Source of the DNA: Ministeria vibrans ATCC 50519
Taxonomy: Eukaryota; Protista; Filasterea
Direction: 5' to 3'
DNA: 64,000 nt
Assembly: GCA_943704425.1 (NCBI GenBank)
Contig: CALSCP010000945.1
Span: forward strand, 220,057-284,056
Shown: piece by piece, positions 4,583 to 59,225 of the stretch
Layout of the letters: each line of letters starts with the position of its first letter
How positions within the stretch are numbered: the stretch's first letter is position 1
Notes under the pieces: model-generated
Told to the model about the DNA's origin: nothing
What the model saw: only the letters and a program-made list of their open reading frames with translations
The model's database searches: none
Made by a program: the position numbers and the translations under genes

Positions 4583-4705
4583 GAACAAGAAAATAATTAA
4601 AAGAGATCGTCATGAATAAGATTGTCGAAAACCTTTCTTCTTTTCACTTTTCAGTGAGTTTTCACTTTCTTTTTCGTCTTTTTGACTGAATACGAACAAA
4701 TTCCC

Positions 4706-5903
4706 ATGAGATCTATCGTGTACCTCACGTTGTGCCTCTACATGGCGTCGGCAAGCGAAATGTACGCTGTTCTCTGACATTCCTTCGCCTAAACATTTTT
4801 GTTTTTTTTCGTTTCTCGTTTTCAGTGTTTCGCTCAATGGCAATCTGCAAATGGAGGCCAAGGCGGGCGGCAGCGTCGTGGTGTTGGCTCCCACCAGGGT
4901 CCAGGGGTTGGGTGTCGCCACAGTGAGCAGTCTGGCCGCAGAGCTGGTCGATATCAACGCAAACATGGCGCGACTCGAAGCAGAAGTGGCGGACGGCTGT
5001 TGCACGGTCGCCCTCGACAGTATCAGCCTTGTGGGCGACCCCGTGGCCCTCGACATGTCCCCCTGGTCCGAAACAACGCTTGTTCGCAACGATGTGACGG
5101 TCAGCTCAAACAGTGCACTTGCGTCGCTGACGGGACTCAACAGACTGTGTACTGTCAAGCGACACATCACGATCCACTCCAACCCAGTGATGACCAGCCT
5201 GAATGGCCTCTCTCGTCTGACCATTGTCAATGGTGACCTTGACCTTGAAAATCTCGGGGCCCTCATCTCACTGCGGGATCTCGGCTCGCTGTTGACCGTC
5301 GACGGCAACCTTCGTCTCTCACAACTCCAGCACCTCGGGTCGCTCACTGGCCTCGAATTGCTCGGCTCCGTGGGTGGCAATTTTCACCTTGAACTCCTCC
5401 CTTCTCTCACTACCCTGGGCGCTGCGTCGTCGCTCACCACCATTGGCGGCAATCTCCAACTCAGCAGTCTCACTCAACTCAGCTCGCTCTCTCTCGACTC
5501 TCTCCAGCTCATCTCGGGCTCTCTGTCCATCACCGACGCAGATCTCGTCACCACATCATTCCCCGCTCTGCAGCGCATTGAAGGCAACGCCTTATTCAGC
5601 ATTGGATCGACGGCCGAGCGTCTCTCGCTCCCTCTTCTCACCCACATTACAGGCAACCTTCAAATCTCCCTCAACACCAATCTGCACACCGTCGACGCCT
5701 TTGCTGTCGCCTCCCTCGGCGGAACCCTTCGCATCACCTTCAACGCTCTTACCAGTCTATCCTTCCTCGACTCCCTCCGCTCCTTTTCCGGCCCCCTCGA
5801 CATCTGGGAACCCTCTGCCTCCATCTGCAACTCCACTCTGGTCCGTCTCACTGCTCTCGCCTCCTCTGCCTCCGTCAACGTTGGCCAGATTAACAACTGT
5901 TAA
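4706..5903 (+). CDS. Secreted receptor-L-domain / Ecm33-like leucine-rich beta-helix protein (intron 4762-4825)
   Basis: Signal peptide MRSIVYLTLCLYMASA in exon 1 splices in frame to the 350-aa ORF, which carries about 10 LxxVxGxLxI repeats. No TM segment. Confidence 0.7.
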
Positions 5904-6305
5904 ATTAGTATCGTCATTAAAAATCAAACCCATATTAATACTAGGATATTATGTCGTAATAAAATAAAAATAATAATAATAGTAATAATAATTATATATT
6001 TTTATAAATAAATTTATTATTACTAATATTAATTACTATTATTATTATTAAAAATAATTGTTATTGCTTCTTTCAAATCAAATTGTTTATCATTCAATGG
6101 ATTCAGATCACTCAGAGGAACCCCCACAAGAACAAGAAACCAGCCTTAGTGACACAGTCAAGGCTTTGGGCGGGACGTTCAATGGCGCCTTCAGTGTACG
6201 CTGAGGGGAGAACACTCAAAAGCAAAAATAATATTATAATAATAATAATAATTCTCCAGCAACTCTCTAAGACCCTTTCTCAAACCGTGGAGATTACAGG
6301 CGCCA

Positions 6306-7029
6306 TGAACGGTCTCTTGGAACAGCTTCTTGTTTCCAACATGCACATCGGTAGAATACAAAATTGAGTGTCGTTTGATCGAAACTCAGTTGTGTAGATT
6401 GCTCGATTGGCCCAACGGACACGCCCGACTCCTACACGGTGACAGTGACGTCGCGAAACACCTCTCCGTTCGATGTAGCCTCTGTGAGTCACACGCTGGC
6501 GCTCGCGACTGCCGCCACCGCGACAGCAGTGCCGTTCGACGACGACCACAGCAGTCGAGCCCCGTCCCCTCTCAACAGTCTCCACCACACCATCGACACG
6601 CACCGCATCTCTCTGAAAGGCGCCCCTTCATCTACACTGACTCCTCTTGTACTCACCGCCACCCTCACCGTCCTCAATCCAACGAGCGGCAAAGCACACC
6701 ACAAACAAGCAACTGCGACTCTGTCTCGTCTTGCTCAATGCACCTGTACCGCAAGCGCTCCACAGCACCCTCACTTAGTCGAACCCCTCTACGACCATCA
6801 CACAACATCAGTCGACGCAATGGCACTGCGACATCTCTTCCGTCTGTCGCCACTCAACGCTATCCAGCGCCATCTTCACCTTCACATTGCTCACCCTCCA
6901 TCCACACTCTCCGTCACTTTCACTGTCCTCGACACTGACCCAACTCGCACCGACGCAGTGCTCGTTGTACCGCTCACGGATGATCCCTCGGCGGCGCTAT
7001 TCGCCCAAGAGCTGAGTGCATTGTTATGA
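6306..7029 (+). CDS. Hypothetical protein (2 exons; intron about 6352-6397)
   Basis: ATG 6306 exon splices GT..AG in frame into ORF 6439-7029. GC-rich, coding-like composition; no recognised domain. Confidence 0.45.
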
Positions 7030-7054
7030 AGAAGTAATAAAAAATTGTATTTTA

Positions 7055-10000
7055 TCACTTGTCGTTCGACAGGAGACTGTAGTCGTGAACGGGACGGATT
7101 TTGACCGCAGTATGGCGGCCATGGCGGGGGGATCTTGGGGTGCGGGAGGTGGCAGAGGAAGGAGAGGAAAGAGAGAGGCCGTTTGTGGTGGGGGTGGTGG
7201 TGCTGGGGGAGGAGGAGGAGGAGGGGGAGGAAGGAGGGGGAGGAGATAGGGGTTGGAGGGGAGAGGGAACGGCGGTGGAGGGAGGAGGGGAGAGGGCTTT
7301 GGTGCGTGGCGGTGTGGATGTGAGTGTGGATGTGAGTGTGGGCGTAGGTGTAGATGTGGGTGTGGGTGTGGGTTGCGGTTGAGCGGGTTGTGGTGGCAGT
7401 TGGGGTTGAGCAGATTGCGGGTGTTGTAGGAGAGGATGTTGCGGCTGAGAAGAAGGCGGTTGCTGGTAATGCTGATTTGGTTGCTGCTGTTGCTGATGCT
7501 GATGTTGTTGCTGCTGTTGGAACATTTTCATTTGCTGGTATTGTTGCTGTTGCATCATTATGGCGACCTTCTGCTGTTGTTGTTGCTGATGCTGTTCGCG
7601 CATCATCAAATACTGTAGCATGAGCATCTTCTGGCTAGGTGTCATTTCAGGGCATTGCTGCTGCAGAAGCATCATGGCACTAAACACCGATGGTGACATA
7701 GCAGCAGCGACAGCAGCCACATTCGCTGCAGAGGTAGCGTCGGTGGTGGGAAAGGGCGGCGCACTCTCGACAGGCGCGTTGCCGTCGGTGCTCCAGCGGG
7801 GGGCACTGGCGACGACTCCCGCTCCTGTTTTAATTGTTGGTGTTGCTACTGCTGCTGCTGCTGTTGCTGCTGTTGGTGGTGTTAGTGGCAGTGATGTTGT
7901 TGTTGTCGATGGCGTCGAGGGAGACGTGGATGTGGTGCCGTTAGAGCTGCTGGTGGTCGTAGACATAAAGGGCGTCGCGTGTACATTGAACTTGGACGCG
8001 GCCGACGCAGACTCACTGTCGTCTGCGGACGCAGAGCCATTCGCGCCCATGTCGACGGTAGGCAGAAGCTGTGACTGCGGTTGCGGTTGTGATGCGTATG
8101 GAGCATAGTTGGTCGGCGTACTGTTCATACGCGGCGAAAAGTTGTTTAGCAGCTGCTGCTGATGCTGTTGGTGGTATTGCGCTTGTGCAAGATACTGGGT
8201 TTGTTGCTGAGGAGACACGGCAGACGAAGCTCCAACGGCCGCCGTGCTGTTGGCGTAGTAGAGGAGCTGCTGTTGAGTAAGCGTGTTGGGATTGACATAG
8301 GCTGCGGCAGCGGCTGCTGCTGCTGCGGCGGCGGCAGCGGCAGACGTTGCATGAGTGTTAGCGGGCGCGGATGTGCCCATGGGAGGCCAGCCAGCAAGAC
8401 CCGCTGCGCCAGGCAACACAGATGCTTGGGATTGATGTTGCTGCTGTTGCTGCTGCTGCTGCTGTTGCTGCTGTTGCTGCTGCAGTTGTTGTTGTTGTAG
8501 GTACGCCAGCTGGTGAGGCGAGTACATGGGCATCAGGGGAACTGCTGCAGTCGGGTCAGCAACCAGAGGTGCTCTCGCGGCATCCGCGGTAGTCACAGAA
8601 GGATCGACTACCTGACGGTCCACACCGCCCTCCTTCTTCCTGTCCTCTTCCGCCGCCGCCGCTGCTGCTGCTGCTGCTGCTGCTGCTCCCGCTGCTTCCT
8701 CCTCTTGCTGGCGCTTGGTCGCAGCTAAGGCTTGCTCTTGGAGCTGCTTTGTCTTCTTGCGCTGCTCTTCCTCTTCCTCCTCTTGCTCCTCCTTGGCACG
8801 CGCTGCAGCCTTTTCTTCCTCCTGTTGTACCTTGGCTGCTTGATCAGCAGCACGTCGTGCCAACTCCACAAAGGTGATGGCAGAGCTCATGCTGGGCAGC
8901 TTGAGTCGCGCTTTGGGAGGATCATTGCGCGGAGCCGCCGGCTGTGGTTCAAGGCCCAGAGGACGTAAAGGATCGGGACGTGCTGCGGCCGCCGCTGCCT
9001 GGCTCTGTTCATCGGCAGCTGTGGACACAATGGTGTCAATGCGAGCACTGAGAGCCGAAGCAATGCGTGCGTCGCTGAGTGGTGAGGCACCAGTACTAGC
9101 GCGAGGATTCGAGCGACTGGGAAGACGCACGGTGAAGGGGCAGCGAGGCAACGGAGGCGGCGCGGGACGCTGAGCAACGACGGCGGCCGCAGAGCGACGA
9201 GTTGAAGCGGCAGAGGCAGCAGTGGCGGTAGCAACGGTACTGGTGGTAATGAGAGTCGCGGCAGCACTTGTGGTTACAACGGACACAGATGGCTTCTTGG
9301 TGTTGGAATGCTCGCGGGTCTTGGAAGGTGCGGAAGCGGTAGTTGCAGCACTCGCAGGCCTCACGGTGGGCTTGGCGGTGCGTCGCCAGTCGGTTGAGGC
9401 GTCGGCGGCTACAGCAACGGGTGCTGCTGAGCGAGACGATGATGCTGGAGTAGCAGAGGCAACAGTGGTAGAACTGCTGTTGTTGCTGCTGTTGGTGTTG
9501 GTGGCGGGAGCGGGAGCGGGAGCGGGGGCGGTGGCGGTGGCGGTGGCAGACGGAGTGGCCCAGACAGAGGAGCGGGTGGGTACGGAAGATGAGTCATCGT
9601 CGTCGGTTCGACGCATAATGCGCACCGATGACTCGTCGCGACTGTTGCTTGTGCGTCGTCGCGCCGACGCCGCTGACCCTGTCGCTGGTCCTGTTGATGC
9701 ACCGCTCGCTGCGCTGTCCTTGGCTTCGGGAGAACCACTTGAGCCCCACAAGTGACGCGACGCGTCAGTGCCACTACCACGCGACGCCTGACGGCGGCTA
9801 AACGTGTCGGTGCCCACACTGAGTCGCTGTTGTGGCGATGTCGGGCCCTTTGACGACGAAGTCACCAACAAGGGTTCGGCAGGGGGTGTGGGCTTGCGGC
9901 GCACTTCGAGAGCGGCGAGTTTCTCGAGAGCGCGACGTTTAGTTTCGGCTTCGCGCTCAGCCTGTTCGCGTTCACGACGAGCACGCGCAGCCTCGGCACG

Positions 10001-45233: not shown

Positions 45234-47892
45234 AAAAACTAACGACCTTTGTCGCGTGCAGGAGAAGGAGACGCAGGCGCATCAGGCGTACCAGGAGGTG
45301 CGACGCCAGCTTTTTGTTGGAGGAGACAAGTACATTGATAAGCTCAACAGAATACTCGACAGCAATGACAGGTACATACATGCACACAGACGCGTGCGCA
45401 CGCGATAAACACACCACTTTATATTTTCTCTTTAGAGGGATAGTACTCGTCACAGCGGAAAGTGGAATGGGAAAAAGTGCTCTCTTGTCAAACTGGCTTG
45501 CGCAGGTGCCACCGCAAGAGGCCACGCAACAGGAAACCATTTTTCTGTCACACTTTTGTGGCGCCACGAGTGCGTCGACGCGGCTCTCGTCAATGCTTGC
45601 ACGTCTCTGTGTGGCACTGTCGGAGCGCATTGCATTGACGCCCGAGGAGCATGCGATTGTCGTGGAGATGACGCAGTGCAACGGGGCCATGTTGGGCCAC
45701 GAGCTATTTGAAGGGTTGCTGGTGCGTGCGAGCGAACGTGCATACCGTGTCGTTGTTGTCCTTGACGCTCTCAATCAGCTTGACGACGCGTTGCTCACGG
45801 ACGATCCACTCTTGCTCAGTGCAGCGTCGCTCGAGGAGGTCGTTGTTGACGACAACAGCCAACACAACCGCAGCAGCGACGTCCACAACGACATTACAGA
45901 ATCTGAATCGTTGTCGTCACTTGGCTCGGTCGTCCTGACTGAAAAGCAGCTGAAACGACTGCGTGCGCGCTATACGGAAACCAGCACAGTGCATGCACTT
46001 CAATGGCTGCCTGTGGCCACGAGACACAGGGACACAGTCGTTCTCCCGCCCAACGTGTATCTAGTGCTCTCAGCAACCCCTGATAGCAAAACATCGCGAA
46101 CGCTCAAGGATTGCAGCACGGCCGAGGCTGATGGCAATGTTGCGCACTACGCGATAGAGCTGTCGCCTGTCTCGATGGACGACCGTCGTGCTCTCATCAT
46201 TGCCGTCTTGCAAGGTGCTTCCAAGGCGCTCGACGATGCCAGTGTTGAGTTGATTTTGCAGAATCCACAGACGGAAAATCCCCTCCACTTGCTGCTGGTG
46301 CTCTCCGAACTGCTTATCCACGGCGACTACTTTACCCTGCAGGACAAAGTCAGTGCACTCGCGCAGCACTCATCTATTGCCAGTTTGCTCAGTGCTATTC
46401 TTTCGCGTTTGGAAATCACCTTTAGCGAAGAGCAGATTTCGCGTGTGTCCTCAGTGCCGACCACAAGCGACGAGCCCCTCTGTGACGGCAAGGGTGTCGT
46501 TGGTGCGTTCCTCTCCTGTGTGTTTGCCGCTCACCGTGGAATCACCGAAGAGGAACTCGCGGCACTGCTTCAACTGAGTCCTCACTCGTTTGCACTGCTG
46601 CGCTCTGCACTGGGGCGCTTTCTTATCGAGAGTGCCTCCTCCCACATTGGCTTTCTCCACGATCACGTCCGCCAGGCCGTTCACGAGCGCTACCTCGCCA
46701 ATCGCTTTGACCGCTTCAAATTGCACGCACACCTTGCGCGCTTTTTTGAGCGTTCTCTTGCCACCGCCGAGCCCGAGGTGGAAGGGAGTATGCCTGCTGT
46801 GCACACACATTTGCGCGCGTTGGAAGAGATTCCTTTTCAACATTTGCAGTCGCAGCAGCCTGAGCTTGCACACTCCCTCGTCCGCCTCTGCAGCACGCAT
46901 TCCTCCCTTGCCGACCGTCTCATTTTCAGCAGTCCTCTTCAGCTGACCGCAACACCCCTCAGCGACTTGGATGGGGCCGCCCTTGGACGCCTCCTCAGCA
47001 ATAACGCGTCGCTGACGTCGCTTGCGCTCAACAATGTTCGTTTGGTGGACACCGTCATGGAGGCCCTCAACGGTGTACTGACGAGTTGCTCGACGCTCAC
47101 GTCGCTCTCGCTCATCGACCAGAGCCTGCGCGAGGCGAGTCTTCTGCCACTCCTCAGTGTCCTGGCCGATTCGAATGGCGTCATTCGCTCGCTCACCATC
47201 CACCATGTTCGACCGCTGTCCACTCAGTCGCTTCAAGTCGTGTCACGTCTCCTGTCGCACCGTTCCTTTCCACCGTCGCTGGTGCACCTCGACCTTTCTC
47301 ACTGTATGTTGATGGGCACTAATCTCTCTCTGCTCGTTCCCGCCCTCATGTCGAATCGGACGCTCAAGACACTCATTCTGAATGGAAACCAAATTGGCGA
47401 GTCGGGTACGGTTTGTCAGTCTCCTGGTCAACAACTGTGGTTGTTCATCAAGTCACGATTGATCTTCGTTTACCTCTGTGTCTTTGTTACCAATAGGTCT
47501 CACGCAACTCATCAATGGTCTGCGGCACAACTGGAAGCTGGCGACACTCGAGCTGGAGCGTTGTCAGCTCAGCGGGGCTCGTGCGGTCGCTCGACTCGCC
47601 GAGATGCTCACAGCCCTTTCGCGTTTGCAGTCGCTCAATATGGCACACAACATGATAACATCGGTAGGGTCGACTCCCCTCCCCGCTTCGAGTAGAATGG
47701 AGTTTAATATCTAATAATTGCGGTTTTAAATTTTTTTTATTTTCATAGAAGGATGGCTCGACTTTTGTGACCGCTCTGAAAAATCATCGTGCTCTGCGCT
47801 CTCTAAATTTCCGAGCGGGAAACATGATGCAGGCACTAGAGAAAGATATGTCGGGGGCGGCCCGCTCAATGAAGTGCACAATGTTAAAGTAA
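44287..47892 (+). CDS. STAND NTPase: DUF4062, NACHT/AAA_16 (TEP1/NPHP3-like) and RI-type LRRs, multi-exon
   Basis: RIFLSSPF...ERERL...VDLRWGV (DUF4062), Walker A AESGMGKS, Walker B VVVVLDALNQL, NPLHL. C-terminal LxxLxLxxN repeats (LKTLILNGNQIG, LQSLNMAHNMI). Confidence 0.8.
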
Positions 47893-48221: not shown

Positions 48222-50789
48222 ATGAAGCTTATTATCGCGACGCTGGTCGTCGCTCTGGCTCTGTTGCACCAGGCTCATGCAGGTATGTCGTTCTTTCGCT
48301 CGCTCTCTCTTTCTCTCTCGACTTTTTTTTTTCACTCATCCTCCACCGCTTGAATGAGCGCCTGAAAGCATGCGCGGGTGATGTCAAACAAGTCATAACA
48401 TGCCACAATGTTCAATGATGCCGCAGATGCGGGCAGCGTTGACCCCACAGTCGCGCGTGGTTTGTGGGACATTCGCGGGTTTCTTTTTTTTTTTTTCTTC
48501 TCCCGTGTAGTCATTGTGGGTTTCGTCTGAAAACCCTCATGCCAAGAAATCCGTTGCACATTTCTCGCTTTATTGCTATCCAAACTACGACTTGGGTAGC
48601 TCTTGCCTCCCACAAGTCTGCGTTGTGCTTTAGGACACTTCTATTTTTCACTTTTCGCTTTGCTGGGGTTTTTGACGTTTTCTTTTTCTGTTCGTAGCCT
48701 GCGAAGGAGGAGAGTGGAAGAAAGACTCGTCCAAGTTCAAGAACTGTGTCACCCTCGCCGGTGACCTCGAAATCAATGACGAGGACATTGACACCAGCGA
48801 AGTAAGAACTTTTCTTTTCTTTTTTTTCTTTTTTTTCTCATCTGACTCACACACATTCCCTCTTACTTGTTCTTAGTTTGACAAGATGAAGTCGCAATTG
48901 TCGTCGCTCAAGACTATTAACGGTCGTCTTTACTTGAAAAAGGCCGACGGTATCAAGTCGCTCGAGTTTCTCAACAACCTGCAGTACATTAAGGGCACGT
49001 CGTGGGGCGGCTCGGGTCTTCACATCGACGACTGTGACGACCTCGAGAACGCCAACTTGCCTAACCTCAAAGAGGTGTGGGGCGAGACAATCATCAAAAA
49101 GAACAAAAAACTGCAGCAAGTCCATTTTGCTGCTCTCGTTGCACTCGGTAGCTACGTCTTGATCGACGACAACGATAAGCTCACCGGCGTTCAGATGGCC
49201 CAGCTGTACGCCCTCTCCGGTGGTCTCACCGTCACCAGCAACCCGCTCATGACCAGCCTGACAATGTCAACAATGAGTTCCTTCTCGGGCTACTGCATCA
49301 TCGACGACAACGACGCGCTCGTCAGCAACCAGATTTTCTTCGGTGCCAGCTACATCTACGACCAGTGCTATCCCTGCACATCGAGCACCTGCAAGAACGG
49401 CGGTACCTGTGCCACCACCCAGTCCTCGACAGCTCCTTTCTTCACCTGCGCTTGCGACACGCACTACTCGGGCACCACTTGTGCCACGGCACTCCCATGC
49501 GCCGCGGCACCCTGCAAGAACGGCGCCACTTGTTCCAACGTGGGCTCCACCGGCTACACGTGCGCCTGCGGCGCCGGCTTCTACGGCACCAATTGCGACC
49601 TCTGGCTCACACAGCAGTATGTCGCCGGCTCGAAAACATCCAAACTTGTCTCGGTCTCCATCGACACTGCCACCGGCATCACGTACGCCGCTGGCTTTGC
49701 CGACTCCAAGATTCCCGGCGTCACTACACACAACGATAAGACCGACTTCTTTGTGGTCGCCGTTAACGAAGCGGACGGATCCTCCGTCTACAACTCCATG
49801 TTCGGCTCGGACAAGGAAGACGAAGTGGTCACCATGCAGGTGAACCCCTCCTCATCGACGATCTACCTCGCGGGAAAGTCTAAGGGCGACTTTGGCAACA
49901 GCGACGCCAGCAAGAACAACGGCGACTTTGACACCCTGTTTATGTCGGTGAGCAAGGCGACCGGTGGTCTTAACTGGGCCAAGAGCTTTGGTGACAGCAA
50001 GGACGACATTCCGCTCGATATGGAAATTGACTTTAGCACTGGCCATGCGTACATTGTGGGCAGCACCTTTGGCAAGTGGAGCAACCTCCCCGAGAAGAGC
50101 AAGGCTTTTGGCTACCTGGCCAAGATCAACATCGCCGACGGTTCGCTCGTCTACACCGTAGCACTGGGCCCGCTCGGCAAGACGAGCGCCGCCACCGGCA
50201 TCGCTCTCGACCTGTCCAACTCGCGTGCTTTCATCTCCATGAACACCGACGATGTGCTTCCTAACTCGGGCGCCACTAACGCCGGCAAGGGCGATATTGG
50301 TCTTATTGTGGTGAACACCGCCACAGGCGCCATCACCAGCACCACTCAGTGGGGTACCGCCGTTGAGGACGAGACGGCCGCCATCGCCATCGACACCAAC
50401 CTTGGCCAGGTGTACATTGTCGGCCAGACGCAGGGCGACCTCAACGGTGTGTCAGGCAGTGATGTCAAATTCTACAACGCCATGGTTATGGCTATCGACA
50501 CCACGACTCTTGCCGTCACCTACACTAAGCTGTGGGGCGACAAGGGAGACGCGTTTGCCTCGGACGTTGTCGTCGACTCGACTTCTGGTCGCGTTCTCGT
50601 TACCGGCTCTACCACCGGTATCTTCTACGGAGATGCCATTGGCGGAGACGCTCGTCGTCGCCGTGCATGGGCCAAGGTCGGCACGACGACCACCACCACC
50701 ACCACCACGACAACTTCGTCAGACGATCGTCGTGATGTCACCGTCGCCGAACAAGACTCGCTCCTTTATTCCGTCCACCGTGGAACTCG

Positions 50790-50826
<37 letters not shown>

Positions 50827-53800
50827 AACCCCATCTGTGTCACCGCCACCACCACGACCACCACCACCACGACAACGTCGGGCGACGACCGTCGTGACAT
50901 CAGCGAGGAAGAAGAGGCTGCCGCTGAACTCAAGACCGAGCTCGAAGAGCTTAACAACCTTGCCCACCGGATGCGCCGAAGCGGAAGCAAGAGCGGCAAG
51001 AGCAAGAGTGGCAAGACGTGCAAGAGCACCCCGTCCGTTGACGAGGCTTTCCTCGTTCAGTTCAACGGTGCCAACGGCGAGCGTGTCTACTCGCGCACCT
51101 GGAACAGTGGTTCGGGTGGCAGTGCCTACGGCTTTGGTGTTGCTGTCGATGCCAGCCGCAAGAATGTCTATCTTGCCGGACAATACTCGGGCGGTTCCAC
51201 CATCGACACCAACTTGCTCTCGTTCATCAACACCAAGGCAACCGCCTTTCTCCTTCAAGTCGACCAAGACTTTGCCACGCCCAAGTCGGACGTCAATGAG
51301 TGCGCTTCGAACCCTTGCATCAACGGCGGCACTTGTGTCAATGACCTCCTCTTCTTCACTTGCGTGTGCCCTTCGGGATACGTTGGTGGGATTTGCGAGA
51401 GCGAACAGGACGAGTGCATCAGCTCTCCGTGCAAGAACAACGGCACTTGTGTCGATGGAATCTCCGACTACTCCTGCACCTGTCTGACTGGCTACGAGGG
51501 CACTCGCTGCGAGACCGACATCAACGAGTGCGCCAGTTCGCCTTGTGCCAACGGAGCGACCTGCACCAACCTTGTGGGTTCGTTCTCCTGCTCATGTGCC
51601 ACTGGCTACACCGGTGCCCAGTGCCTCACCAACATTGACGATTGCCCCAGCACAAACGCCTGCCACAGCCACGGCACTTGTAACGATGGCATTGAATCGT
51701 ACACCTGCTCATGCAACGCCGGTTTTACCGGTACCCTCTGCGAGACCAACGTCAACGATTGTCCCACAGGCACCGTTTGCAGCGGTCATGGTACCTGTAA
51801 CGATGGTATTGCCTCGTACACCTGCACCTGTGACACAGGATACACCTCGGCGCTCTGCCAGACAAACATTAACGACTGCGCGTCGAACCCGTGCAAGAAC
51901 CAGGGCGCGTGCAAAGACGGCATTGCCTCGTACACCTGCACTTGCCCCGCCGGCTACACTGGCACACACTGCGAGACGAACATCAATGAGTGTGAGGGCG
52001 TCACCTGCATGAACGGTGGCAACTGCATCGACAAGGTGAACTATTTCAAGTGTGCGTGCGTCACCGGCTTCACCGGCGTGTACTGCGAAACGAACATCGA
52101 TGACTGCACTGCGTCGTCGTGCTCCGCGTACGGCACTTGCCAGGACGGCGTTGCCTCGTTCTTTTGCGCTTGCGCTCCCGGCTACACCGGCACCTCGTGC
52201 TCCAGCAACATTGACGATTGCGCGTCGAACCCGTGCAAGAACCAGGGCGCGTGCAACGACGGCATTACCTCGTACACCTGCACATGCCCCGCCGGCTACA
52301 CTGGCACACACTGCGAGACGAACATCAATGAGTGTGAGGGCGTCACCTGCATGAACGGTGGCAACTGTATCGACCAGGTGAACCATTTCAAGTGTGCGTG
52401 CGTCACCGGCTTCACCGGCGTGTACTGCGAAACGAACATTGATGACTGCACTGCGTCGTCGTGCTCCGCGTACGGCACTTGCCAGGACGGCGTTGCCTCG
52501 TTCTTTTGCGCTTGCGCTCCCGGCTACACTGGCACCTCGTGCTCCAGCAACATTGACGATTGCGCGTCGAACCCGTGCAAGAACCAGGGCGCGTGCAACG
52601 ACGGCATTACCTCGTACACCTGCACATGCCCCGCCGGCTACACTGGCACACACTGCGAGACTGACATTAATGAGTGTGCTTCGAATCCTTGCGAGAACGG
52701 CGGCACTTGCAATGACCATGTCGGCTCTTTCTCGTGCAACTGCGCCGGAACTGGCTTTGTTGGCTCCACATGCAACGCTCAATTCGATGAGTGTGTCTCG
52801 AGCCCGTGCCAGAACAGCGGCGTGTGCTTCTCGGGCATCAACTACTACTCTTGCAACTGCGACGGAACCGGCTACACCGGTACCATGTGCGATGTGGAGG
52901 TCGACGAATGCGAAAGCAGCCCTTGTGCCAACGGTGGCGTCTGCTCCAACCTCATCAATGCATTCTCGTGCTCCTGTGCTGCAGGCTTTGTAGGCACACA
53001 ATGTCAGACCAACACAAACGAGTGTGCCTCGAACCCGTGTGTCTTTGGCGTGTGCACTGACCTCGTCAACGGCTTTTCTTGTGCCTGCACCGCCGGCTAC
53101 GAAGGTGTCGTATGCGACGTGAACACCGACGAGTGCGGATCGTCGCCGTGCCAGAACGGCGGCGTGTGCACCGACCTTGTTAACAGCTTCTCGTGCGGAT
53201 GCCCCAACGGGTTTGCCGGCGATGTGTGCGAGACAAACATTGACGATTGCGCTGTTGCGCCTTGCAAGAACGGCGCGACCTGTGTCGATGGCATTGCACA
53301 GTACACCTGTACGTGTAGCGCCGGCTACGAGGGCACCCGTTGCCAGACAAACACAAACGAGTGTGCCTCAAACCCGTGTGTCTTTGGCGTGTGCACTGAC
53401 CTCGTCAACGGCTTTTCTTGTGCCTGCACTGCCGGCTACGAAGGTGTCGTATGCGACGTGAACACCGACGAGTGCGGATCGTCGCCGTGCCAGAACGGCG
53501 GCGTGTGCACCGACCTTGTCAACAGCTTCTCGTGCGGATGCCCTAACGGGTTTGCCGGCGATGTGTGCGAGACGAACATTGACGATTGCGCTGTTGCGCC
53601 TTGCAAGAACGGCGCGACCTGTGTCGATGGCATTGCACAGTACACGTGTACTTGTAGCGCCGGTTACGAGGGCACCAACTGCGAGACCAACATTGATGAC
53701 TGCGCGACGAGCCCATGCCACCAAGGCGAATGTATCGACGCGGTTCAGGACTTCACCTGTGTGTGTAGCCCGGGCTACACGAACACTCTCTGTGACGAGA

Positions 53801-56800
53801 ACATTGACGATTGTGCATCGAATCCGTGCCAGAACGACGGCACCTGTGCCGACGGTGTTGTTTCCTACACTTGCTCGTGCCCAGGCGGTTTCAAGGGCCG
53901 TCTTTGTGAGGAGAACATCGACGATTGTGCCGTCACGAAACCTTGCAATGGACAAGGCAGCTGCAACGATGGTGTTCAGTCGTCCACGTGCTCATGCGAC
54001 ACAGGCTATACCGGTACCGAATGCGAGACGAACATTGACGACTGCGCCGGAGTCACTTGCCAACACGAGGGCACCTGCGTCGACTCCATTGCCGCTTTCG
54101 CATGCACTTGCGCCGGTGGCTACACCGGCACTGTGTGCGAGACCGAGATCGACGAATGCGCCTCTTCTCCCTGTCAGAACGGCGGAGTGTGCACCGACTT
54201 TGTCAACTACTACACGTGCGCTTGCGAATATGGCTTTGTTGGCAGCAACTGCGAACTTGTTGGCTTTATTCTCTCCCCGGCAGGCGGTGTCTTCACCATT
54301 GGCTCGATCACGGCTGAGTTTCCCGAAGATGCCGTTTCGCAGACCGTCACTGTTTTGGTGGAGCTCGCCGCCGACCTGACGGTGCTCCCGACCGGCCCGA
54401 GCGGCTCCACCTCGCTTTTGACCAGCGCTGTCTCGTTCCGTACTCTCGAACTCCGTACCGCCGACTTCCTCTTGCCCTACTCGGTTGTTCTCACGCTGTC
54501 CACCGCCACCAGCAAGGATGTTGTTCCCCAGATGTACTACACCAACCCAGATGGTCTCTCGACAAGCTGGACTCTCGCTGACGATTTGCCCGCGCGTCGA
54601 CGTGCCCTCTCGTGCAGCGCCGGTCAAGGTTGCGGCACCGTCTCTGGCACTAACATTGCCTTTGGTGTTTTTGTTGTTGACGAGTGCGCTTCGTCGCCCT
54701 GCCAAAATGGCGGCACCTGTGTTGACCTTGTTGACCAGTTCACTTGCACATGCCCTATTGAGTTTCTCGGTACTCTTTGCGAGACTCCGAACCCGTGCGA
54801 ACCGTCGCCGTGCCAGAGCTTTTCTGAGTGCACTATCATTGGCGGTGGTACCGACTTTTTCTGCGACTGCATTGGAGCCGGTCTCACCTGTTTCGACAAG
54901 GTGTGCGGCAACTGTACTATTGACGCGGGAGCCGCTCAAAACGGCGGCGGCGCCTCGGGCACCAGCAGTGGCTCAACGAGCTACGCGGCCGCCGGTGCCG
55001 CCGGTGTTCTTTTGCTTTTGGCGCTCGCGCTGCTTGCTAAACGTCGCCGTCTGCGCAAGACTGCGCTCGGTGATAGCGAGCTGGAGACTGTCGAGAGTGT
55101 TCCCATCATGATCAACCCTGGCTACAAGATGACCAAGGCTGACTCGCTCGTGCTCGGCATGGCTCCCGGCGACCAAATGGAGGACACTGACTCACTCCTC
55201 GACTACGCCGCTCCCATCGACTTTGCCCAGCGTGCCCCGCGTGTCGCTGAGTATCAGGCTCTGGATAACAAGAACAACTCGGCCGGCGAGTACGGATCCC
55301 TGAAGTATGTTGTGCTCAGCCGCGATGGTGCTTACCGCGTTAAAGGCCGCGGCGACCCCGTCGATCTGTCGCTCAAGGTCGACGAATCGACTGGTGCCTA
55401 CACCGATTTTGAGGGCAACCTTGTGTATTCTGGACCGGGCAAGCTCAAGCTTGGTAAGGACGGAATTTACCGCAGCGAGGCTGGCGAGGCTGTGTACGGC
55501 AACCGCTCGCTCACGCGTGGCAGTGATGGTGTGTACCGAAACGCGGAGGGTGACGCCGTGTACGGCAATGGACTCACGCTCGGCCGTGACGGTGTCTGGT
55601 ACTCGGACGACGGTCAACCCATCTATGGAAACCGCGCAGCACACGAGCGTGTGCTGCGCTGCCCCGGCAACGTGATTGAGGGTGACGATCGCATGACAGT
55701 CTACGGTAATGGAAACGGACGAAACCGTCCCGCTCGTGACAAGGACGGTTTTGCCGTGTACGGCAACGGTCAGGCACGCCGCGGACGCGATGGTGCCAAC
55801 AACGCCGACGAAGATGCCATGTACGGCAATGGCCAGGCACGCCGCGGACGCGATGGTGCCAACAACGACAACGAAGATGCCATGTACGGCAATGGCCAGG
55901 CTCGCCGCGGACGCCGCAGTGACAACGGTGACGACATGGACGGTGATGACGTGTACGGCAACCGCAACCGCGACGATGGTGCCGACTATGGTGAGTTTGC
56001 CAACCGCAAGCGTGGACCCCGCGTCGACGCCTACGGCAACCCTGTTGAGGACAATGACGATGTGTACGGCAATCGCAACCGCGGCGACGATGGTGCTGAG
56101 TATGGCGAGTTTGCCAATCGCCAGCGTGGACCGCGACGTGTCGATGCCTACGGCAACCCTGTCGAGGAAGATGATGGCATGTACGGCAATCGCCAGCGCA
56201 CGGACGGACAACAGTACGACGAGGAAGCCTACGGCGAGTTTGCCAACCGCAAGCGTGGACCACGCGTTGATGCCTATGGCAACCCGGTCGAGGACGATGA
56301 CATGGACGGAGTGTATGGCAACCGCGAACGTGACGATGGTGGCGCCGAGTACGGCGAGTTCGCCAACCGACGTCTGCCACCTCGTCGTGGCCCCGGCGGC
56401 ACAGCTGCCGACGATGAGGATATGGATGCCTGGTACGGCAACCGTGACCGTGGTCAGCAGCAGGACGGCGCTGAATACGGCGAGTTTGCCAACCGATCGA
56501 TGCCCCCGCGTGGCTCGCGCCGTCCCGGTGGCGACGACAGCGAGGATGCTTTCTACGGCAACCGCGCTGGCAATGACCAAGATGCCTACTACGGTGCTCT
56601 TCAGGGTGGCGATGCTATGTATGGCAACCGCGCTGGCGGCGAACAGGACGCGTACTATGGTGCGCTGCAGGGTGGCGATGCTATGTATGGCAACCGCGCT
56701 GGCGGCGAACAGGACGCGTACTATGGTGCGCTGCAAGGTGGCGCAGTCTATGGCAACCGTGCCTTTGGCAATGGTGAAGATGAGTATGCCGCCTCGAACG

Positions 56801-58292
56801 TGCGCACACGCGGTCACGACGGTGTGTACCGCAGCCGCTCGGTGCTTCCCGACGAGCAGGGCGTGTTCGACGACGAAGAGGCTGTCTATGGCAACCGCGT
56901 CGACGAGGGTGCTGTCTATGGCAACCGCGCCGTTGACGAGGGCGCCGTCTACGGCAACAACGTTGGCGGTGAGGATGCCACGTACGGCAACCGCAACAAC
57001 TTTGGCGACGACGAAGAGGAGTACGCGGCGACTGCCGTGAAGATTGGCCGCCAGGAAGAGCGTCTGGTGCCCAAGGGCATTCAGCTGTCGGCACCTCAGG
57101 CATCCTCGAGCATTGCCCGTCAATACGACGTTGTGACCTCAGAGCCCGGTGATGACTACCGCAAGTACGCTGAGGCTGCCGCTCGTGGTGATGCCGACGA
57201 GGTCATCTACTCGCGCGTGTTTGTGGCTAAGAAGAGCAAGGCGAAGGGCGACCGTGCCGACTCGCGCAACGTCTTTTCGCTGACGGGCGCCACCGAAGGC
57301 GAGTCGGTGGCGAACAACATGCAGCTGAGCCGCACTCAGTCGTGTTTCCGTTCGGCCAATGCTGCGGCCACGTCGGACTTTGTGCCTGAAATTGCCGATC
57401 TGGCCGGAAACTTTTACCCGCGCGAGTGGCTCACCAAGGTGTGCGAGCTTGGCGACGGCGAGTTCGGTCAGGTGGTGCAGGCGAGCACTGACGACGGTGG
57501 TTCGCGCCCCGAGAAGTACATGGTCGCTGTCAACTTTTTGGACGAGCAGGCGACTCCACGCGAGCGCAGCGCGTTCATCCGCGAGGCTCGTCTTATGGCC
57601 ATGTTCTCTCACCCGAATGTGTTGAACCTCGTTGGTGTGTGCACTCCGGATCAGCCTTGGCTGCTCCTCACCGAGTTCTGCCAGTACGGCGACTTGCGCA
57701 ACTTCCTGCGTCGCTGTGCCACGACCGAGTCGCTCAAGGTTACGTACGCCGACCAACTGGGCATCGCCGCGCAGATTGCCGAGGCTATGCAGTACCTGTC
57801 AACCAAGTTGTTTGTGCATCGCGACGTGTCGGCGCGCAACTGCTACGTGTGTGAAGGTGGCGTCGTCAAGCTTGGTGGCTTCGGTCTAGCTCGTCAGCTC
57901 ATGGGCGAGGAGGACTTTTACTCGGTGCAGTCGCGTGGTCGCCTGCCTGTGCGCTGGATGGCGCTCGAGTCATTGACGCACCAGCGCTTCACCGTCAAGT
58001 CGGATGTGTGGTCGTACGGTGTGCTTCTTTGGGAGATTGCGACGTTTGGTACGGCGCGTCCTTTCAAGGAGCTCAAGCCGCCGCGCATGATTGAGGCACT
58101 GCTCGAAGGGCGCCGTCTGGCACGACCCCGCGGGTGCCCGGTGCAGCTGCACAAGCTCATGTTGGAGTGCTGGAACCGCGACCCGACCATGCGGCCGACC
58201 TTTGTCGAGTTGTCCGAGGAACTCGCGGAGATGGCATCGCGTGCCGAGAAGGCCTGCGGTCACACCGCCGACCTGGGTCTGTCCCTGGACCA
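48222..58292 (+). CDS. Giant receptor tyrosine (pseudo)kinase: signal peptide, L domain, EGF, SBBP-like beta-propeller, 26 tandem EGF, ZU5-like, EGF, TM, Tyr-motif array, TK fold; 3' end lost in the gap
   Basis: Exon 1 MKLIIATLVVALALLHQAHA; L domain FKNCVTLAGDLEI..LKTINGRLYL; Ca-binding EGF repeats; TM about 54985-55038 followed by KRRRLRK; TK motifs LGDGEFG, HRDVSARN, LPVRWMALE, SDVWSYG. Confidence 0.9.
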
Positions 58293-59225
58293 NNNNNNNN
58301 NNNNNNNNNNNNNNNNNNNNNNNNNNNNNNNNNNNNNNNNNNNNNNNNNNNNNNNNNNNNNNNNNNNNNNNNNNNNNNNNNNNNNNNNNNNNNNNNNNNN
58401 NNNNNNNNNNNNNNNNNNNNNNNNNNNNNNNNNNNNNNNNNNNNNNNNNNNNNNNNNNNNNNNNNNNNNNNNNNNNNNNNNNNNNNNNNNNNNNNNNNNN
58501 NNNNNNNNNNNNNNNNNNNNNNNNNNNNNNNNNNNNNNNNNNNNNNNNNNNNNNNNNNNNNNNNNNNNNNNNNNNNNNNNNNNNNNNNNNNNNNNNNNNN
58601 NNNNNNNNNNNNNNNNNNNNNNNNNNNNNNNNNNNNNNNNNNNNNNNNNNNNNNNNNNNNNNNNNNNNNNNNNNNNNNNNNNNNNNNNNNNNNNNNNNNN
58701 NNNNNNNNNNNNNNNNNNNNNNNNNNNNNNNNNNNNNNNNNNNNNNNNNNNNNNNNNNNNNNNNNNNNNNNNNNNNNNNNNNNNNNNNNNNNNNNNNNNN
58801 NNNNNNNNNNNNNNNNNNNNNNNNNNNNNNNNNNNNNNNNNNNNNNNNNNNNNNNNNNNNNNNNNNNNNNNNNNNNNNNNNNNNNNNNNNNNNNNNNNNN
58901 NNNNNNNNNNNNNNNNNNNNNNNNNNNNNNNNNNNNNNNNNNNNNNNNNNNNNNNNNNNNNNNNNNNNNNNNNNNNNNNNNNNNNNNNNNNNNNNNNNNN
59001 NNNNNNNNNNNNNNNNNNNNNNNNNNNNNNNNNNNNNNNNNNNNNNNNNNNNNNNNNNNNNNNNNNNNNNNNNNNNNNNNNNNNNNNNNNNNNNNNNNNN
59101 NNNNNNNNNNNNNNNNNNNNNNNNNNNNNNNNNNNNNNNNNNNNNNNNNNNNNNNNNNNNNNNNNNNNNNNNNNNNNNNNNNNNNNNNNNNNNNNNNNNN
59201 NNNNNNNNNNNNNNNNNNNNNNNNN
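58293..59225. other. Assembly gap (933 N); two further 10-N gaps at 37764-37773 and 43341-43350
   Basis: Runs of N in the sequence. Confidence 1.

What the first reader, a model, noticed from the sequence alone, without database searches (positions are those of the whole stretch)
55495..56991. Cytoplasmic array of 23 YGN and 5 YGEF motifs: a LAT-like multivalent phosphotyrosine scaffold built into a receptor
Seen: about 500 aa of low-complexity tail between TM and kinase carry 23 YGN motifs, mostly in acidic context (e.g. DEDAMYGN, DDVYGN), plus 5 YGEF, 3 YYGAL, and a juxtamembrane NPGY upstream. The array is built from nested tandem duplications. Established: pY-x-N is the Grb2-family SH2 ligand, EEIYGEF is the optimal Src substrate, NPxY binds PTB domains, and multivalent LAT-Grb2-SOS assemblies phase-separate. 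Inference: a Src-primed, very high-valency Grb2 docking or condensate platform in a unicellular holozoan.
Basis: partly seen in the sequence, partly recalled or inferred. Interest (0 to 1): 0.8.

Follow-up and report, generated by a model that had tools for sequence, protein, structure and literature searches.

The report
Tyrosine-x-Asn array in dead-kinase receptor
A giant cell-surface receptor of a single-celled relative of animals has a dead kinase domain and an 800-residue inner tail carrying 23 Tyr-Gly-Asn motifs; its sister genes keep the same Tyr-x-Asn pattern, so the tail is probably a many-site phosphotyrosine docking platform, but no Grb2-type reader was found in this genome.

Summary
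Window 55495-56991 (+) encodes 499 residues with 23 YGN, 5 YGEF and 3 YYGAL, and NPGY lies upstream. Shuffles give 0.65 YGN on average and never more than 5.

The stretch sits between the membrane helix and a tyrosine-kinase domain in one three-exon receptor gene (48222 to at least 58292, then an assembly gap).

- The kinase lacks the VAIK lysine and the DFG aspartate, so phosphorylation must come from another kinase.
- The genome holds three paralogues, and two environmental contigs hold relatives. Four of the five tails carry 15-24 YxN and the fifth 5, all far above chance, with a variable +1 residue. One has no DNA-level repeats. YxN therefore looks selected, not merely copied.
- The first five or so YGN lie in a conserved, possibly beta-hairpin module, where the tyrosines may be structural.
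- No SH3-SH2-SH3 adaptor and no Grb2-type tryptophan was seen among 28 SH2 matches.
- NPGY is not conserved.

Verdict: probably a trans-phosphorylated, high-valency docking tail on a pseudokinase receptor. It is a new variant of a known kind. The Grb2/LAT/condensate part is unsupported.

The scan had noted this same gene before in an overlapping window of the same genome, not on other DNA.

The parts
48222..48282 (+). Exon 1: start codon and signal peptide (about 20 hydrophobic residues), followed by a GT donor
   Evidence: Six-frame reading and sequence
48698..48801 (+). Exon 2: short exon at the start of the receptor L domain, flanked by AG and GT
48877..58292 (+). Exon 3: one open frame of more than 3,100 codons, cut at its 3' end by the N run 58293-59225, so the C-terminus is unknown
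48892..54981 (+). Ectodomain: Recep_L domain, beta-propeller repeat (SBBP) region and about 27 EGF repeats
   Evidence: Pfam scan
54982..55059 (+). Transmembrane helix followed by the basic stop-transfer KRRRLRK, which places the tail in the cytoplasm
55114..55125 (+). Juxtamembrane NPGY. It is NPAF in paralogue C1494 and absent in C313 and C1674
55324..55683 (+). Conserved proximal repeat module (unit roughly V-Y-[G/A]-N..L..G.DG.Y-R). It is shared with three paralogues and a metagenome relative and contains the first few YGN of the finding
   Evidence: Alignments A1-A3; profile search of own genome; no Pfam match; AF2 short strands at pLDDT 50-77
55495..56991 (+). The finding: 499 residues with 23 YGN, 5 YGEF and 3 YYGAL. 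Composition is G 18%, D 13%, R 12%, A 10%, N 9%, Y 8%
55752..55914 (+). 63-nt tandem array (2.6 copies, 94% matches), one YGN per unit. The unit looks like a degenerate copy of the proximal module unit
55938..56369 (+). 117-nt tandem array (3.6 copies, 72% matches). Each unit carries two YGN and one YGEF
56545..56743 (+). 66-nt tandem array (3 copies, 89% matches). Each unit carries one YGN and one YYGAL
56871..56958 (+). 30/33-nt tandem array (about 2-2.4 copies), one YGN per unit
57142..57219 (+). Pre-kinase segment conserved in all four paralogues, with two conserved tyrosines (GDDY and [I/L]-Y-x-x-V)
57436..58224 (+). Tyrosine-kinase-fold domain (PF07714, E 4e-84), predicted pseudokinase. 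The beta3 Lys is replaced by Asn (57532-57534) and the DFG Asp by Gly (57877-57879); HRD is kept (57817-57825)

Best explanation
The stretch is the larger, mostly disordered part of an 800-residue cytoplasmic tail. The tail lies between the membrane helix and a catalytically dead tyrosine-kinase domain of a giant EGF-repeat receptor.

Its repeated element is a short linear motif: an acidic residue, then Ala/Pro, then Val/Met, then Tyr-[Gly/Ala]-Asn.

Most likely mechanism (inferred): the tyrosines are phosphorylated in trans. The kinase would be either a Src-type cytoplasmic kinase or one of the two catalytically intact paralogous receptors, in an ErbB2/ErbB3-like division of labour. The resulting pTyr-x-Asn sites then recruit many copies of an SH2-domain protein that selects Asn at +2. 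The pseudokinase receptor would thus act as a high-valency docking and clustering platform.

Shown here: the motif count, the cytoplasmic position, the loss of catalytic residues, family-wide retention of Tyr and Asn(+2), and Src-like SH2 sequence in the genome.

For: Counts and chance: 23 YGN against 0.65 expected, with no shuffle above 5.

Topology: signal peptide, EGF ectodomain, membrane helix plus KRRRLRK, tail, PK_Tyr domain.

Pseudokinase: alignment to EGFR and RET shows VAVK to VAVN and DFG to GFG. The nearest paralogue has VAVE and GFG at the same positions.

Family: four paralogues in this genome and one metagenome relative.
- Their tails hold 24, 20, 15, 5 and 17 YxN, against shuffle means of 3.8, 2.7, 1.9, 0.8 and 2.4 (z 4.8 to 11).
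- The +1 residue varies: G, A, V, Q, S, W, E, R.
- At aligned proximal sites the +1 residue swaps, for example YGN/YQN and YGN/YAN.
- Paralogue C1494 keeps 20 YxN with no DNA tandem repeat detectable.

Pooled consensus of 81 sites: D/E at -3 and -5, A/P at -2, V at -1 (38/81), G or A at +1 (65/81), N at +2. From established knowledge this fits Src/Abl-type substrates. Filasterean and choanoflagellate Src kinases do phosphorylate AEEEIYGE-type peptides (PMC7298416).

Motif classes: paralogue C313 alternates YANG with five YAMM, a YxxM motif. Grb2 SH2 reads pY-x-N and PI3K SH2 reads pY-x-x-M (PMC3787023).

Disorder: AF2 gives pLDDT below 50 for nearly all of the distal array.

Kinases and readers present: Src-family-like SH2 sequence, SH3-SH2-kinase genes, and Crk-like and Nck-like adaptors exist in the genome. 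Paralogues C313 and C1674 keep VAVK, HRD and DF[T/G].

Precedents: RM2 tyrosine repeats of Monosiga RTKB2 are phosphorylated and bind a Src SH2 (PMC3584944). Choanoflagellate transmembrane proteins carry YxxP arrays that bind Crk SH2 (PMC5043372).
Against: - There are no expression, phosphorylation or binding data.
- No SH3-SH2-SH3 gene was found, and none of the roughly 17 SH2 domains whose C-terminal half could be read has a Trp at the Grb2 EF-loop position.
- Gly or Ala at +1 is not the usual residue in known Grb2 sites, which mostly have V, I, Q or E (own knowledge).
- The first few YGN sit in a conserved repeat with DG and NG turn-like motifs and predicted short strands. There the Tyr and Asn could be structural.
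- Much of the count in this copy comes from recent tandem duplication, with units 89-94% identical.
- The AF2 alignments were very shallow (4-6 rows), so low confidence is weak evidence for disorder.
Confidence: 0.45

Rival explanations
1. Phosphorylation-independent repeat. The YGN units are degenerate copies of a cytoplasmic beta-hairpin repeat (strand, DG turn, strand, NG/NR turn) and/or act as Tyr/Arg 'stickers' in a polyampholyte low-complexity region. Such a region would self-associate or bind a partner without any SH2 reader. The tyrosines would then be structural or adhesive, not signalling sites.
For: - The proximal module is conserved in all five family members, with an invariant V-Y-G-N..L..G.DG.Y-R block.
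- AF2 of the C313 module gives an all-beta pattern of regularly spaced short strands, mean pLDDT 54 with blocks up to 77. In this gene residues 107-153 of the tail reach 54-67 with short strands.
- The 63-nt unit retains both the YGNG and the GRDG turn motifs of the proximal unit.
- The finding region has 59 Arg and 39 Tyr in 499 residues.
- No Grb2-type reader was found.
Against: - There is no match to MORN, YD, cell-wall-binding or any other Pfam repeat even at E up to 10, and no Atlas look-alike.
- Confidence of both models is low.
- In the distal arrays the partner-strand residues are replaced by Gly, Ala, Asp, Gln and Arg, yet Tyr and Asn(+2) persist.
- Gly at +3, needed for an NG turn, is present in only 25 of 81 sites.
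- Acidic residues at -3 and -5 and Val at -1 are what kinases select, not what a hairpin needs.
- The co-occurring YAMM and YGEF motifs are classic phosphotyrosine motifs.
Confidence: 0.25
2. A Src-primed, Grb2-specific docking platform that forms LAT-Grb2-SOS-type condensates, with the juxtamembrane NPGY serving a PTB domain.
For: - 23 pY-x-N-class motifs far exceed the valency of LAT.
- YGEF matches the Src optimal peptide core (PMC7298416).
- Grb2 homologues are reported in choanoflagellates (PMC7260276).
- One SH3-SH2 adaptor here (contig C335) has an SH2 N-terminal half about as close to Grb2 as to SHP2 and Abl.
Against: - No SH3-SH2-SH3 layout appears among 28 SH2 and about 100 SH3 matches, and no Grb2-type Trp was seen.
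- The SH3-SH2 genes examined are kinase-linked or Crk-, Nck- or Vav-like. The kinase-less ones on contigs C335 and C486 have no second SH3.
- NPGY is not conserved.
- YGEF is confined to one 117-nt array in this copy; the nearest paralogue C1494 has none.
- SOS and condensation were not tested.
Confidence: 0.15
3. Functionally neutral low-complexity expansion. Replication slippage amplified a Tyr-Gly-Asn-containing unit in a tolerant linker, and the motif count has no specific role.
For: - There are four adjacent tandem arrays with units up to 94% identical.
- The arrays differ completely between paralogues.
- The reverse strand and other frames are also open across the region because of the repeat composition.
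Against: - YxN enrichment recurs in five independently diverged tails, including one without detectable DNA repeats.
- Aligned sites keep Tyr and Asn while the +1 residue changes.
- Synonymous codon variation within the 23 motifs shows protein-level retention.
- All repeat periods are multiples of three and the frame stays open for more than 3,100 codons.
Confidence: 0.1

Closest known systems
RM2 tyrosine repeats in the tail of Monosiga brevicollis RTKB2 (PMC3584944)
   Same: Both are lineage-specific, disordered, repeated tyrosine modules with acidic residues before the Tyr, built into the cytoplasmic part of an RTK of a unicellular holozoan. RM2 is phosphorylated by a Src-like kinase and then binds a Src SH2 domain. 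Some RTKB members are also predicted pseudokinases.
   Different: RM2 is about 80 residues long, present in 1-6 copies, and lies C-terminal to an active kinase that autophosphorylates it. Here the units are 10-39 residues and carry 23 sites, lie between the membrane and a dead kinase, and have a Y-[G/A]-N core. No sequence relationship was found: the exhaustive HMMER search returned a single environmental relative.
ErbB3/HER3 (pseudokinase receptor with multiple docking tyrosines)
   Same: Both are receptors with an L-domain-containing ectodomain, an impaired kinase and a multi-site docking region that must be phosphorylated by an active family member. Here two paralogues look active and two look dead.
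   Different: ErbB3 has about six YxxM sites in a C-terminal tail, and its lesion is in the HRD motif. Here the VAIK Lys and DFG Asp are lost, the array is juxtamembrane, and the motif is YxN. The kinase domain is only about 35-43% identical to any animal RTK and only one Recep_L domain is detected, so this is not an ErbB family member.
p130Cas/BCAR1 substrate domain and the YxxP-repeat transmembrane proteins of choanoflagellates (PMC5043372)
   Same: Both are disordered arrays of 10-25 copies of one SH2-ligand motif. In p130Cas the array is phosphorylated by Src at many sites, and multiplicity rather than any single site matters. The pre-metazoan examples sit in the cytoplasmic region of transmembrane proteins.
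   Different: Their motif is YxxP, read by Crk, not YxN. They have no kinase-fold domain, and there is no sequence homology.
LAT (and FRS2, Gab, Shc) Grb2-docking scaffolds
   Same: Both are membrane-anchored, disordered and carry multiple pY-x-N sites.
   Different: LAT has 3-4 Grb2 sites, no ectodomain and no kinase fold, and is animal-specific. Its Grb2 sites have V or E at +1. No Grb2-type adaptor was detected in this genome.

Membership tests
Receptor tyrosine kinase (architecture) | Signal peptide, ectodomain, single membrane helix and cytoplasmic tyrosine-kinase-fold domain | tested here: met
   Signal peptide exon at 48222. Recep_L, EGF and SBBP domains. Helix plus KRRRLRK. PF07714 at E 4e-84.
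Receptor tyrosine kinase (catalytically competent) | Beta3 Lys (VAIK), HRD Asp and DFG Asp all present | tested here: not met
   Alignment to EGFR and RET shows Lys replaced by Asn (VAVNFL) and DFG replaced by GFG; HRD is kept. The same two positions are lost in paralogue C1494.
Grb2-family SH2 ligand (pY-x-N) | Tyr with Asn at +2 in an accessible cytoplasmic segment | tested here: met
   24 YxN in the tail. Cytoplasmic side of the helix. pLDDT below 50 over the distal array.
Grb2-family SH2 ligand (pY-x-N) | The tyrosines are phosphorylated | not testable with these tools
   No phosphoproteome or transcript data for this organism are available here.
Grb2-family SH2 ligand (pY-x-N) | A Grb2-type reader in the same genome: SH3-SH2-SH3 layout and a Trp in the SH2 EF loop | tested here: inconclusive
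   28 SH2 and about 100 SH3 matches were mapped, and none shows an SH3-SH2-SH3 layout. No EF-loop Trp appears in the roughly 17 SH2 C-terminal halves that could be read. About 10 SH2 genes are split by introns or gaps, so absence is not proven.
LAT-type condensate scaffold | Valency of at least 3 pYxN sites plus multivalent Grb2-SOS partners that phase-separate | not testable with these tools
   Motif valency is met (23). The partners were not found or not sought, and condensation needs reconstitution.
Monosiga RM2 domain | Sequence homology to the ~80-residue RM2 unit, located C-terminal to the kinase | tested here: not met
   phmmer of the whole tail against 1.84 billion representatives found only one environmental protein. 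The array is N-terminal to the kinase.
ErbB/EGFR family | L domain, furin-like Cys-rich domain, L domain ectodomain and an ErbB-type kinase | tested here: not met
   Only one Recep_L match and no furin-like domain. The kinase is roughly equally distant from EGFR, RET, MuSK, Abl, Met, ROS and InsR.
Known beta-hairpin repeats (MORN, YD/RHS, cell-wall-binding) | Match to the family profile | tested here: not met
   Pfam scan of the proximal module from three genes at E up to 10 gave only chance-level DUF hits.
NPxY PTB-binding site | NPxY conserved in the juxtamembrane region of relatives | tested here: not met
   NPGY here, NPAF in C1494, and no NPx[YF] at the aligned place in C313 or C1674.

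The most novel reading that the evidence does not exclude
A unicellular relative of animals runs an ErbB2/ErbB3-style division of labour. Two catalytically dead receptor paralogues have turned their juxtamembrane region into phosphotyrosine scaffolds of 20 or more Y-x-N sites each. These are written by the two active paralogues or by Src, and read by an SH2 domain that selects Asn(+2) without the Grb2 tryptophan. That would be an independent solution to pYxN recognition, possibly driving receptor clustering or condensation.
Probability: 0.15. Interest if true: 0.8.

Novelty: new variant of a known kind. Interest (0 to 1): 0.5.

Why it matters
Phosphotyrosine signalling arose before animals, but what unicellular receptor tyrosine kinases do downstream is almost unknown. 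Only one, Monosiga RTKB2, has been studied biochemically.

This family would be a clean test system:
- One short motif is repeated 15-24 times per chain in four of the five family tails (5 in the fifth).
- Dead and live kinase paralogues sit side by side in one genome.

If it is, Grb2-type wiring extends to filasterean-like lineages. Either way it bears on when scaffold-based, multivalent receptor signalling appeared.

Tried and rejected
1. Word-index protein searches with the tail and with the pre-kinase segment plus kinase. These found no orthologue. The best kinase hits were generic: 35-43% identity to ROS, InsR and a Capsaspora RTK.
2. Metagenome-contig scan with the proximal-module alignment. 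There were 150 pattern matches but none was confirmed.
3. ESM Atlas look-alike search for the C313 proximal module. No usable hit.
4. Pfam at E up to 10 on the proximal module. No MORN, YD or CW_binding match, so that idea stays a resemblance only.
5. AF2 of the whole tail and of the C313 module. Confidence was too low (mean pLDDT 36 and 54) to justify a fold search, so none was run.
6. Hunt for Grb2. The candidates turned out to be an SH3-SH2-kinase gene (C1507), plus sequences that by eye look Abl-like and Csk-like, and Crk-like (SH2-SH3-SH3), Nck-like (SH3x3-SH2), Vav-like (C1-SH3-SH2), RasGAP-like, PLC-gamma-like and SHP2-like genes. Two kinase-less SH3-SH2 genes (C335, C486) lack a C-terminal SH3.
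7. Organism identity. A literature search for the metagenome sample name gave nothing. 'Filasterean-like' rests on other agents' unchecked notes.
8. The reverse-strand ORF 55192-57123 and the +2-frame ORF 55709-57040 were rejected as genes. They are by-products of the repeat composition inside a 3,100-codon frame that has domain matches on both sides.
9. Exons were never joined for a search. SH2 halves and the three exons of this gene were handled separately by reference. The two frame pieces of the metagenome contig were pooled only for motif counting.


Full report
**1. The observation**

Window 55495-56991 translates in the + strand frame to 499 codons without a stop. A script count gives 23 YGN, 5 YGEF, 3 YYGAL, 39 tyrosines and 24 YxN. 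The single NPGY lies upstream at 55114-55125.

Composition-preserving shuffles (20,000) give a mean of 0.65 YGN (maximum 5) and 3.5 YxN (maximum 13). In the rest of the same open frame only 2 of 74 tyrosines are followed by x-Asn. So this is not a general bias of the gene. Of the 23 YGN, 22 have an acidic residue within the six preceding positions.

Tandem Repeats Finder shows four adjacent arrays: periods of 63, 117, 66 and 30/33 nt at 94, 72, 89 and 84-89% matches. All periods are multiples of three. After collapsing the arrays, about a dozen independent YGN remain. The 23 motifs use five different codon combinations, with TAT in 8 of 23 against 9% elsewhere in the gene. That points to retention at the protein level.

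**2. The gene**

The stretch lies in one open frame of more than 3,100 codons (48877 to 58292), preceded by two short exons:
- Exon 1, 48222-48282, encodes the start codon and a signal peptide.
- Exon 2 is 48698-48801.

An assembly gap (58293-59225) cuts the 3' end just after the kinase domain, so any C-terminal tail is unknown.

Pfam finds a receptor L domain, beta-propeller repeats and about 27 EGF repeats in the N-terminal 2,030 residues. It finds nothing in the 803 residues after the membrane helix. It then finds a tyrosine-kinase domain at E 4e-84. The helix (54982-55038) is followed by KRRRLRK, so the tail is cytoplasmic. GC at the three codon positions in the array matches the flanking coding parts.

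**3. The kinase is predicted dead**

Residue-by-residue alignment to EGFR and RET shows two losses. The beta3 lysine is replaced by asparagine (VAVNFL, 57532-57534). The DFG aspartate is replaced by glycine (GGFG, 57877-57879). HRD-x-x-x-x-N is kept. By the usual criteria this is a pseudokinase.

**4. A small gene family**

Searching the window's own genome (29.7 Mb, 2,860 contigs) with the array, and then with a profile of the conserved proximal part, found three paralogues. They lie on contigs C1494, C313 and C1674. All have EGF-repeat ectodomains, one helix, a 600-700-residue tail and a kinase domain.

| Gene | YxN in tail | Shuffle mean | Kinase residues |
|---|---|---|---|
| This gene (C945) | 24 | 3.8 | VAVN, GFG (dead) |
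| C1494 | 20 | 2.7 | VAVE, GFG (dead) |
| C313 | 15 | 1.9 | VAVK, HRD, DFT (probably active) |
| C1674 | 5 | 0.8 | VAVK, HRD, DFG (probably active) |
| Metagenome relative P0034 | 17 | 2.4 | Lys, HRD and DFG all lost |

Kinase residues are; motif counts are (z 4.8 to 11).

An exhaustive HMMER search of the whole tail against 1.84 billion representative proteins returned exactly one relative. This is P0034, a fragment from a JGI metagenome contig. It has a helix, a YxN-rich tail and an even more degenerate kinase.

A word search with the C313 module returned P0035, which is 99.8% identical to the C1674 gene. It comes from an ENA metagenome assembly. So the organism or a near-identical strain has been sampled environmentally. 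Nothing from Capsaspora, choanoflagellates or animals matched the tail.

**5. Is YxN selected or merely copied?**

- The +1 residue varies across the family: G, A, V, Q, S, W, E, R.
- In the well-aligned proximal part, sites correspond one to one between this gene and C1494 with +1 swaps (YGN/YQN, YGN/YAN). Tyr and Asn stay fixed.
- C1494 has no DNA tandem repeat detectable by TRF in its tail, yet keeps 20 YxN in otherwise diverged sequence.
- The pooled consensus of 81 sites is D/E at -5 and -3, A/P at -2, V at -1 (38/81), G or A at +1 (65/81), N at +2, and R or G at +3.

From established knowledge of tyrosine-kinase substrate preferences, acidic residues at -3, a beta-branched or hydrophobic residue at -1 and Gly/Ala at +1 are the Src/Abl-type signature. 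Src kinases of Monosiga and Capsaspora are routinely assayed on AEEEIYGE-type peptides (PMC7298416). Asn at +2 is the defining ligand feature for the Grb2 SH2 domain, and YxxM is the feature for PI3K SH2 domains (PMC3787023).

Paralogue C313 alternates YANG with five YAMM in a recent 22-residue repeat. The co-occurrence of two textbook SH2-ligand classes favours a docking-site reading.

**6. What argues for caution**

First, part of the array may be structural.
- The first 120-240 residues of the tail in all family members form a conserved repeat. Its unit is roughly V-Y-[G/A]-N..L..G.DG.Y-R, with an 11/22-residue period (alignments A1-A3).
- The first five or so YGN of the finding (55495 to about 55760) belong to it.
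- It matches no Pfam family even at E up to 10 and has no Atlas look-alike.
- AF2 predicts regularly spaced short strands. Confidence is modest: blocks of 54-67 in this gene, and mean 54 with blocks up to 77 in C313.
- DG and NG are classic hairpin-turn dipeptides, so in this module the Tyr and Asn may be structural.
- The 63-nt unit further downstream still shows both YGNG and GRDG. It looks like a degenerate copy of the module unit, so the arrays probably grew out of the module.
- Beyond it, the strand-forming residues are gone and pLDDT is 25-40. Gly at +3 is present in only 25 of 81 sites. That is why I favour a linear-motif reading for the bulk of the array.

Second, I could not find the proposed reader.
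- The genome gives 28 SH2 matches and about 100 SH3 matches.
- Mapping them against each other shows SH3-SH2-kinase genes and Crk-like, Nck-like, Vav-like, RasGAP-like, PLC-gamma-like and SHP2-like layouts. There are also two kinase-less SH3-SH2 genes. No SH3-SH2-SH3 layout appears.
- None of the roughly 17 SH2 domains whose C-terminal half I could read has a tryptophan at the EF-loop position that gives Grb2 its Asn(+2) selectivity.
- About ten SH2 genes are interrupted by introns or gaps, so this is not proof of absence.
- The N-terminal SH2 half of the C335 adaptor is about as close to Grb2 as to SHP2 and Abl, which decides nothing.
- A Src-family-like SH2 half is present.

- NPGY is NPAF in C1494 and absent in C313 and C1674.
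- YGEF is confined to the 117-nt array of this copy; C1494, the paralogue checked for it, has none.

**7. Comparison with what is known**

- The nearest described thing is the RM2 repeat of Monosiga RTKB2. It is a disordered, acidic, tyrosine-bearing module in 1-6 copies behind an active kinase. RTKB2 and MbSrc1 phosphorylate it, and it then binds the MbSrc1 SH2 domain. Three RTKB members are thought to be pseudokinases (PMC3584944).
- Choanoflagellate transmembrane proteins with up to 10 cytoplasmic YxxP motifs bind the Crk SH2 domain. p130Cas has 15 such motifs, of which Src phosphorylates ten or more (PMC5043372).
- ErbB3 is the animal model of a dead receptor that serves as a multi-site scaffold for a live partner.

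The present case shares the logic of all three. It differs in four ways: the motif class (YxN), the valency (23-24 on one chain), the position (between membrane and kinase), and the lack of any detectable sequence relationship to them. I therefore file it as a new variant of a known kind, not as a member of any of these families.

**8. Verdict**

A trans-phosphorylated, high-valency docking tail on a pseudokinase receptor is the best explanation (confidence about 0.45). A phosphorylation-independent hairpin or sticker repeat is the main rival (0.25). The specific Grb2/LAT/condensate version (0.15) and neutral expansion (0.1) come after.

Interest is moderate. The family offers an unusually clean system for asking how phosphotyrosine scaffolding worked before animals, but every functional step is still inference.

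The taxonomic label 'unicellular holozoan, filasterean-like' rests on the gene content seen here (many tyrosine kinases and SH2 genes in a 30-Mb genome) and on other agents' unchecked notes. I did not verify it independently.

No exon joining was done for any search. Split SH2 domains and the three exons of this gene were handled piece by piece.

Noticed in passing
G000:C313 (L040 about 3178-8187) and G000:C1674 (L041, minus strand): Two further paralogues of this receptor keep the VAIK Lys, HRD and DF[T/G], so they look catalytically active. This gene and C1494 are dead at the same two positions. That is a live/dead split within one small family.
   Followed up: partly
L040 (C313), tail residues about 1080-1190 of the 1,418-codon frame: A recent 22-residue tandem repeat alternates YANG with EYAMM. 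One array thus combines a pYxN-class and a pYxxM-class motif.
   Followed up: partly
L042 (ENA ERZ23497376, scaffold_1391) and L033 (JGI 3300071654, Ga0620614_025506): P0035 on the ENA metagenome scaffold is 99.8% identical to the C1674 paralogue, so the same or a near-identical organism is in that sample. The JGI contig carries a more distant family member. Its tail reads in two frames, which suggests a frameshift or a small intron near nt 820-890.
   Followed up: partly
window 57142-57219: A pre-kinase segment with two tyrosines (GDDY and [I/L]-Y-x-x-V) is conserved in all four paralogues. It is a candidate regulatory juxtamembrane element, distinct from the variable arrays.
   Followed up: no
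window 58293-59225: A 933-base N run removes the end of the gene right after the kinase domain. In paralogue C1494 the frame ends about 20 residues after the corresponding point.
   Followed up: partly
G000:C209 (L024): A C1-SH3-SH2 arrangement resembles the C-terminal part of Vav. Its SH2 alpha-B region resembles that of Grb2, but there is no tryptophan in the EF loop.
   Followed up: partly
G000:C335 (L023) and G000:C486 (L018): Two kinase-less SH3-SH2 genes have no second SH3. They are the nearest things to a small adaptor that could read the array.
   Followed up: partly
window 47000-47700 (+): An open frame with leucine-rich-repeat-like sequence (RNI-type pattern) lies just upstream of the receptor gene.
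   Followed up: no
window 55192-57123 (-) and 55709-57040 (+, other frame): Long ORFs of 643 and 443 codons overlap the array in other frames. They are by-products of the GC-rich repeat composition, not genes.
   Followed up: yes
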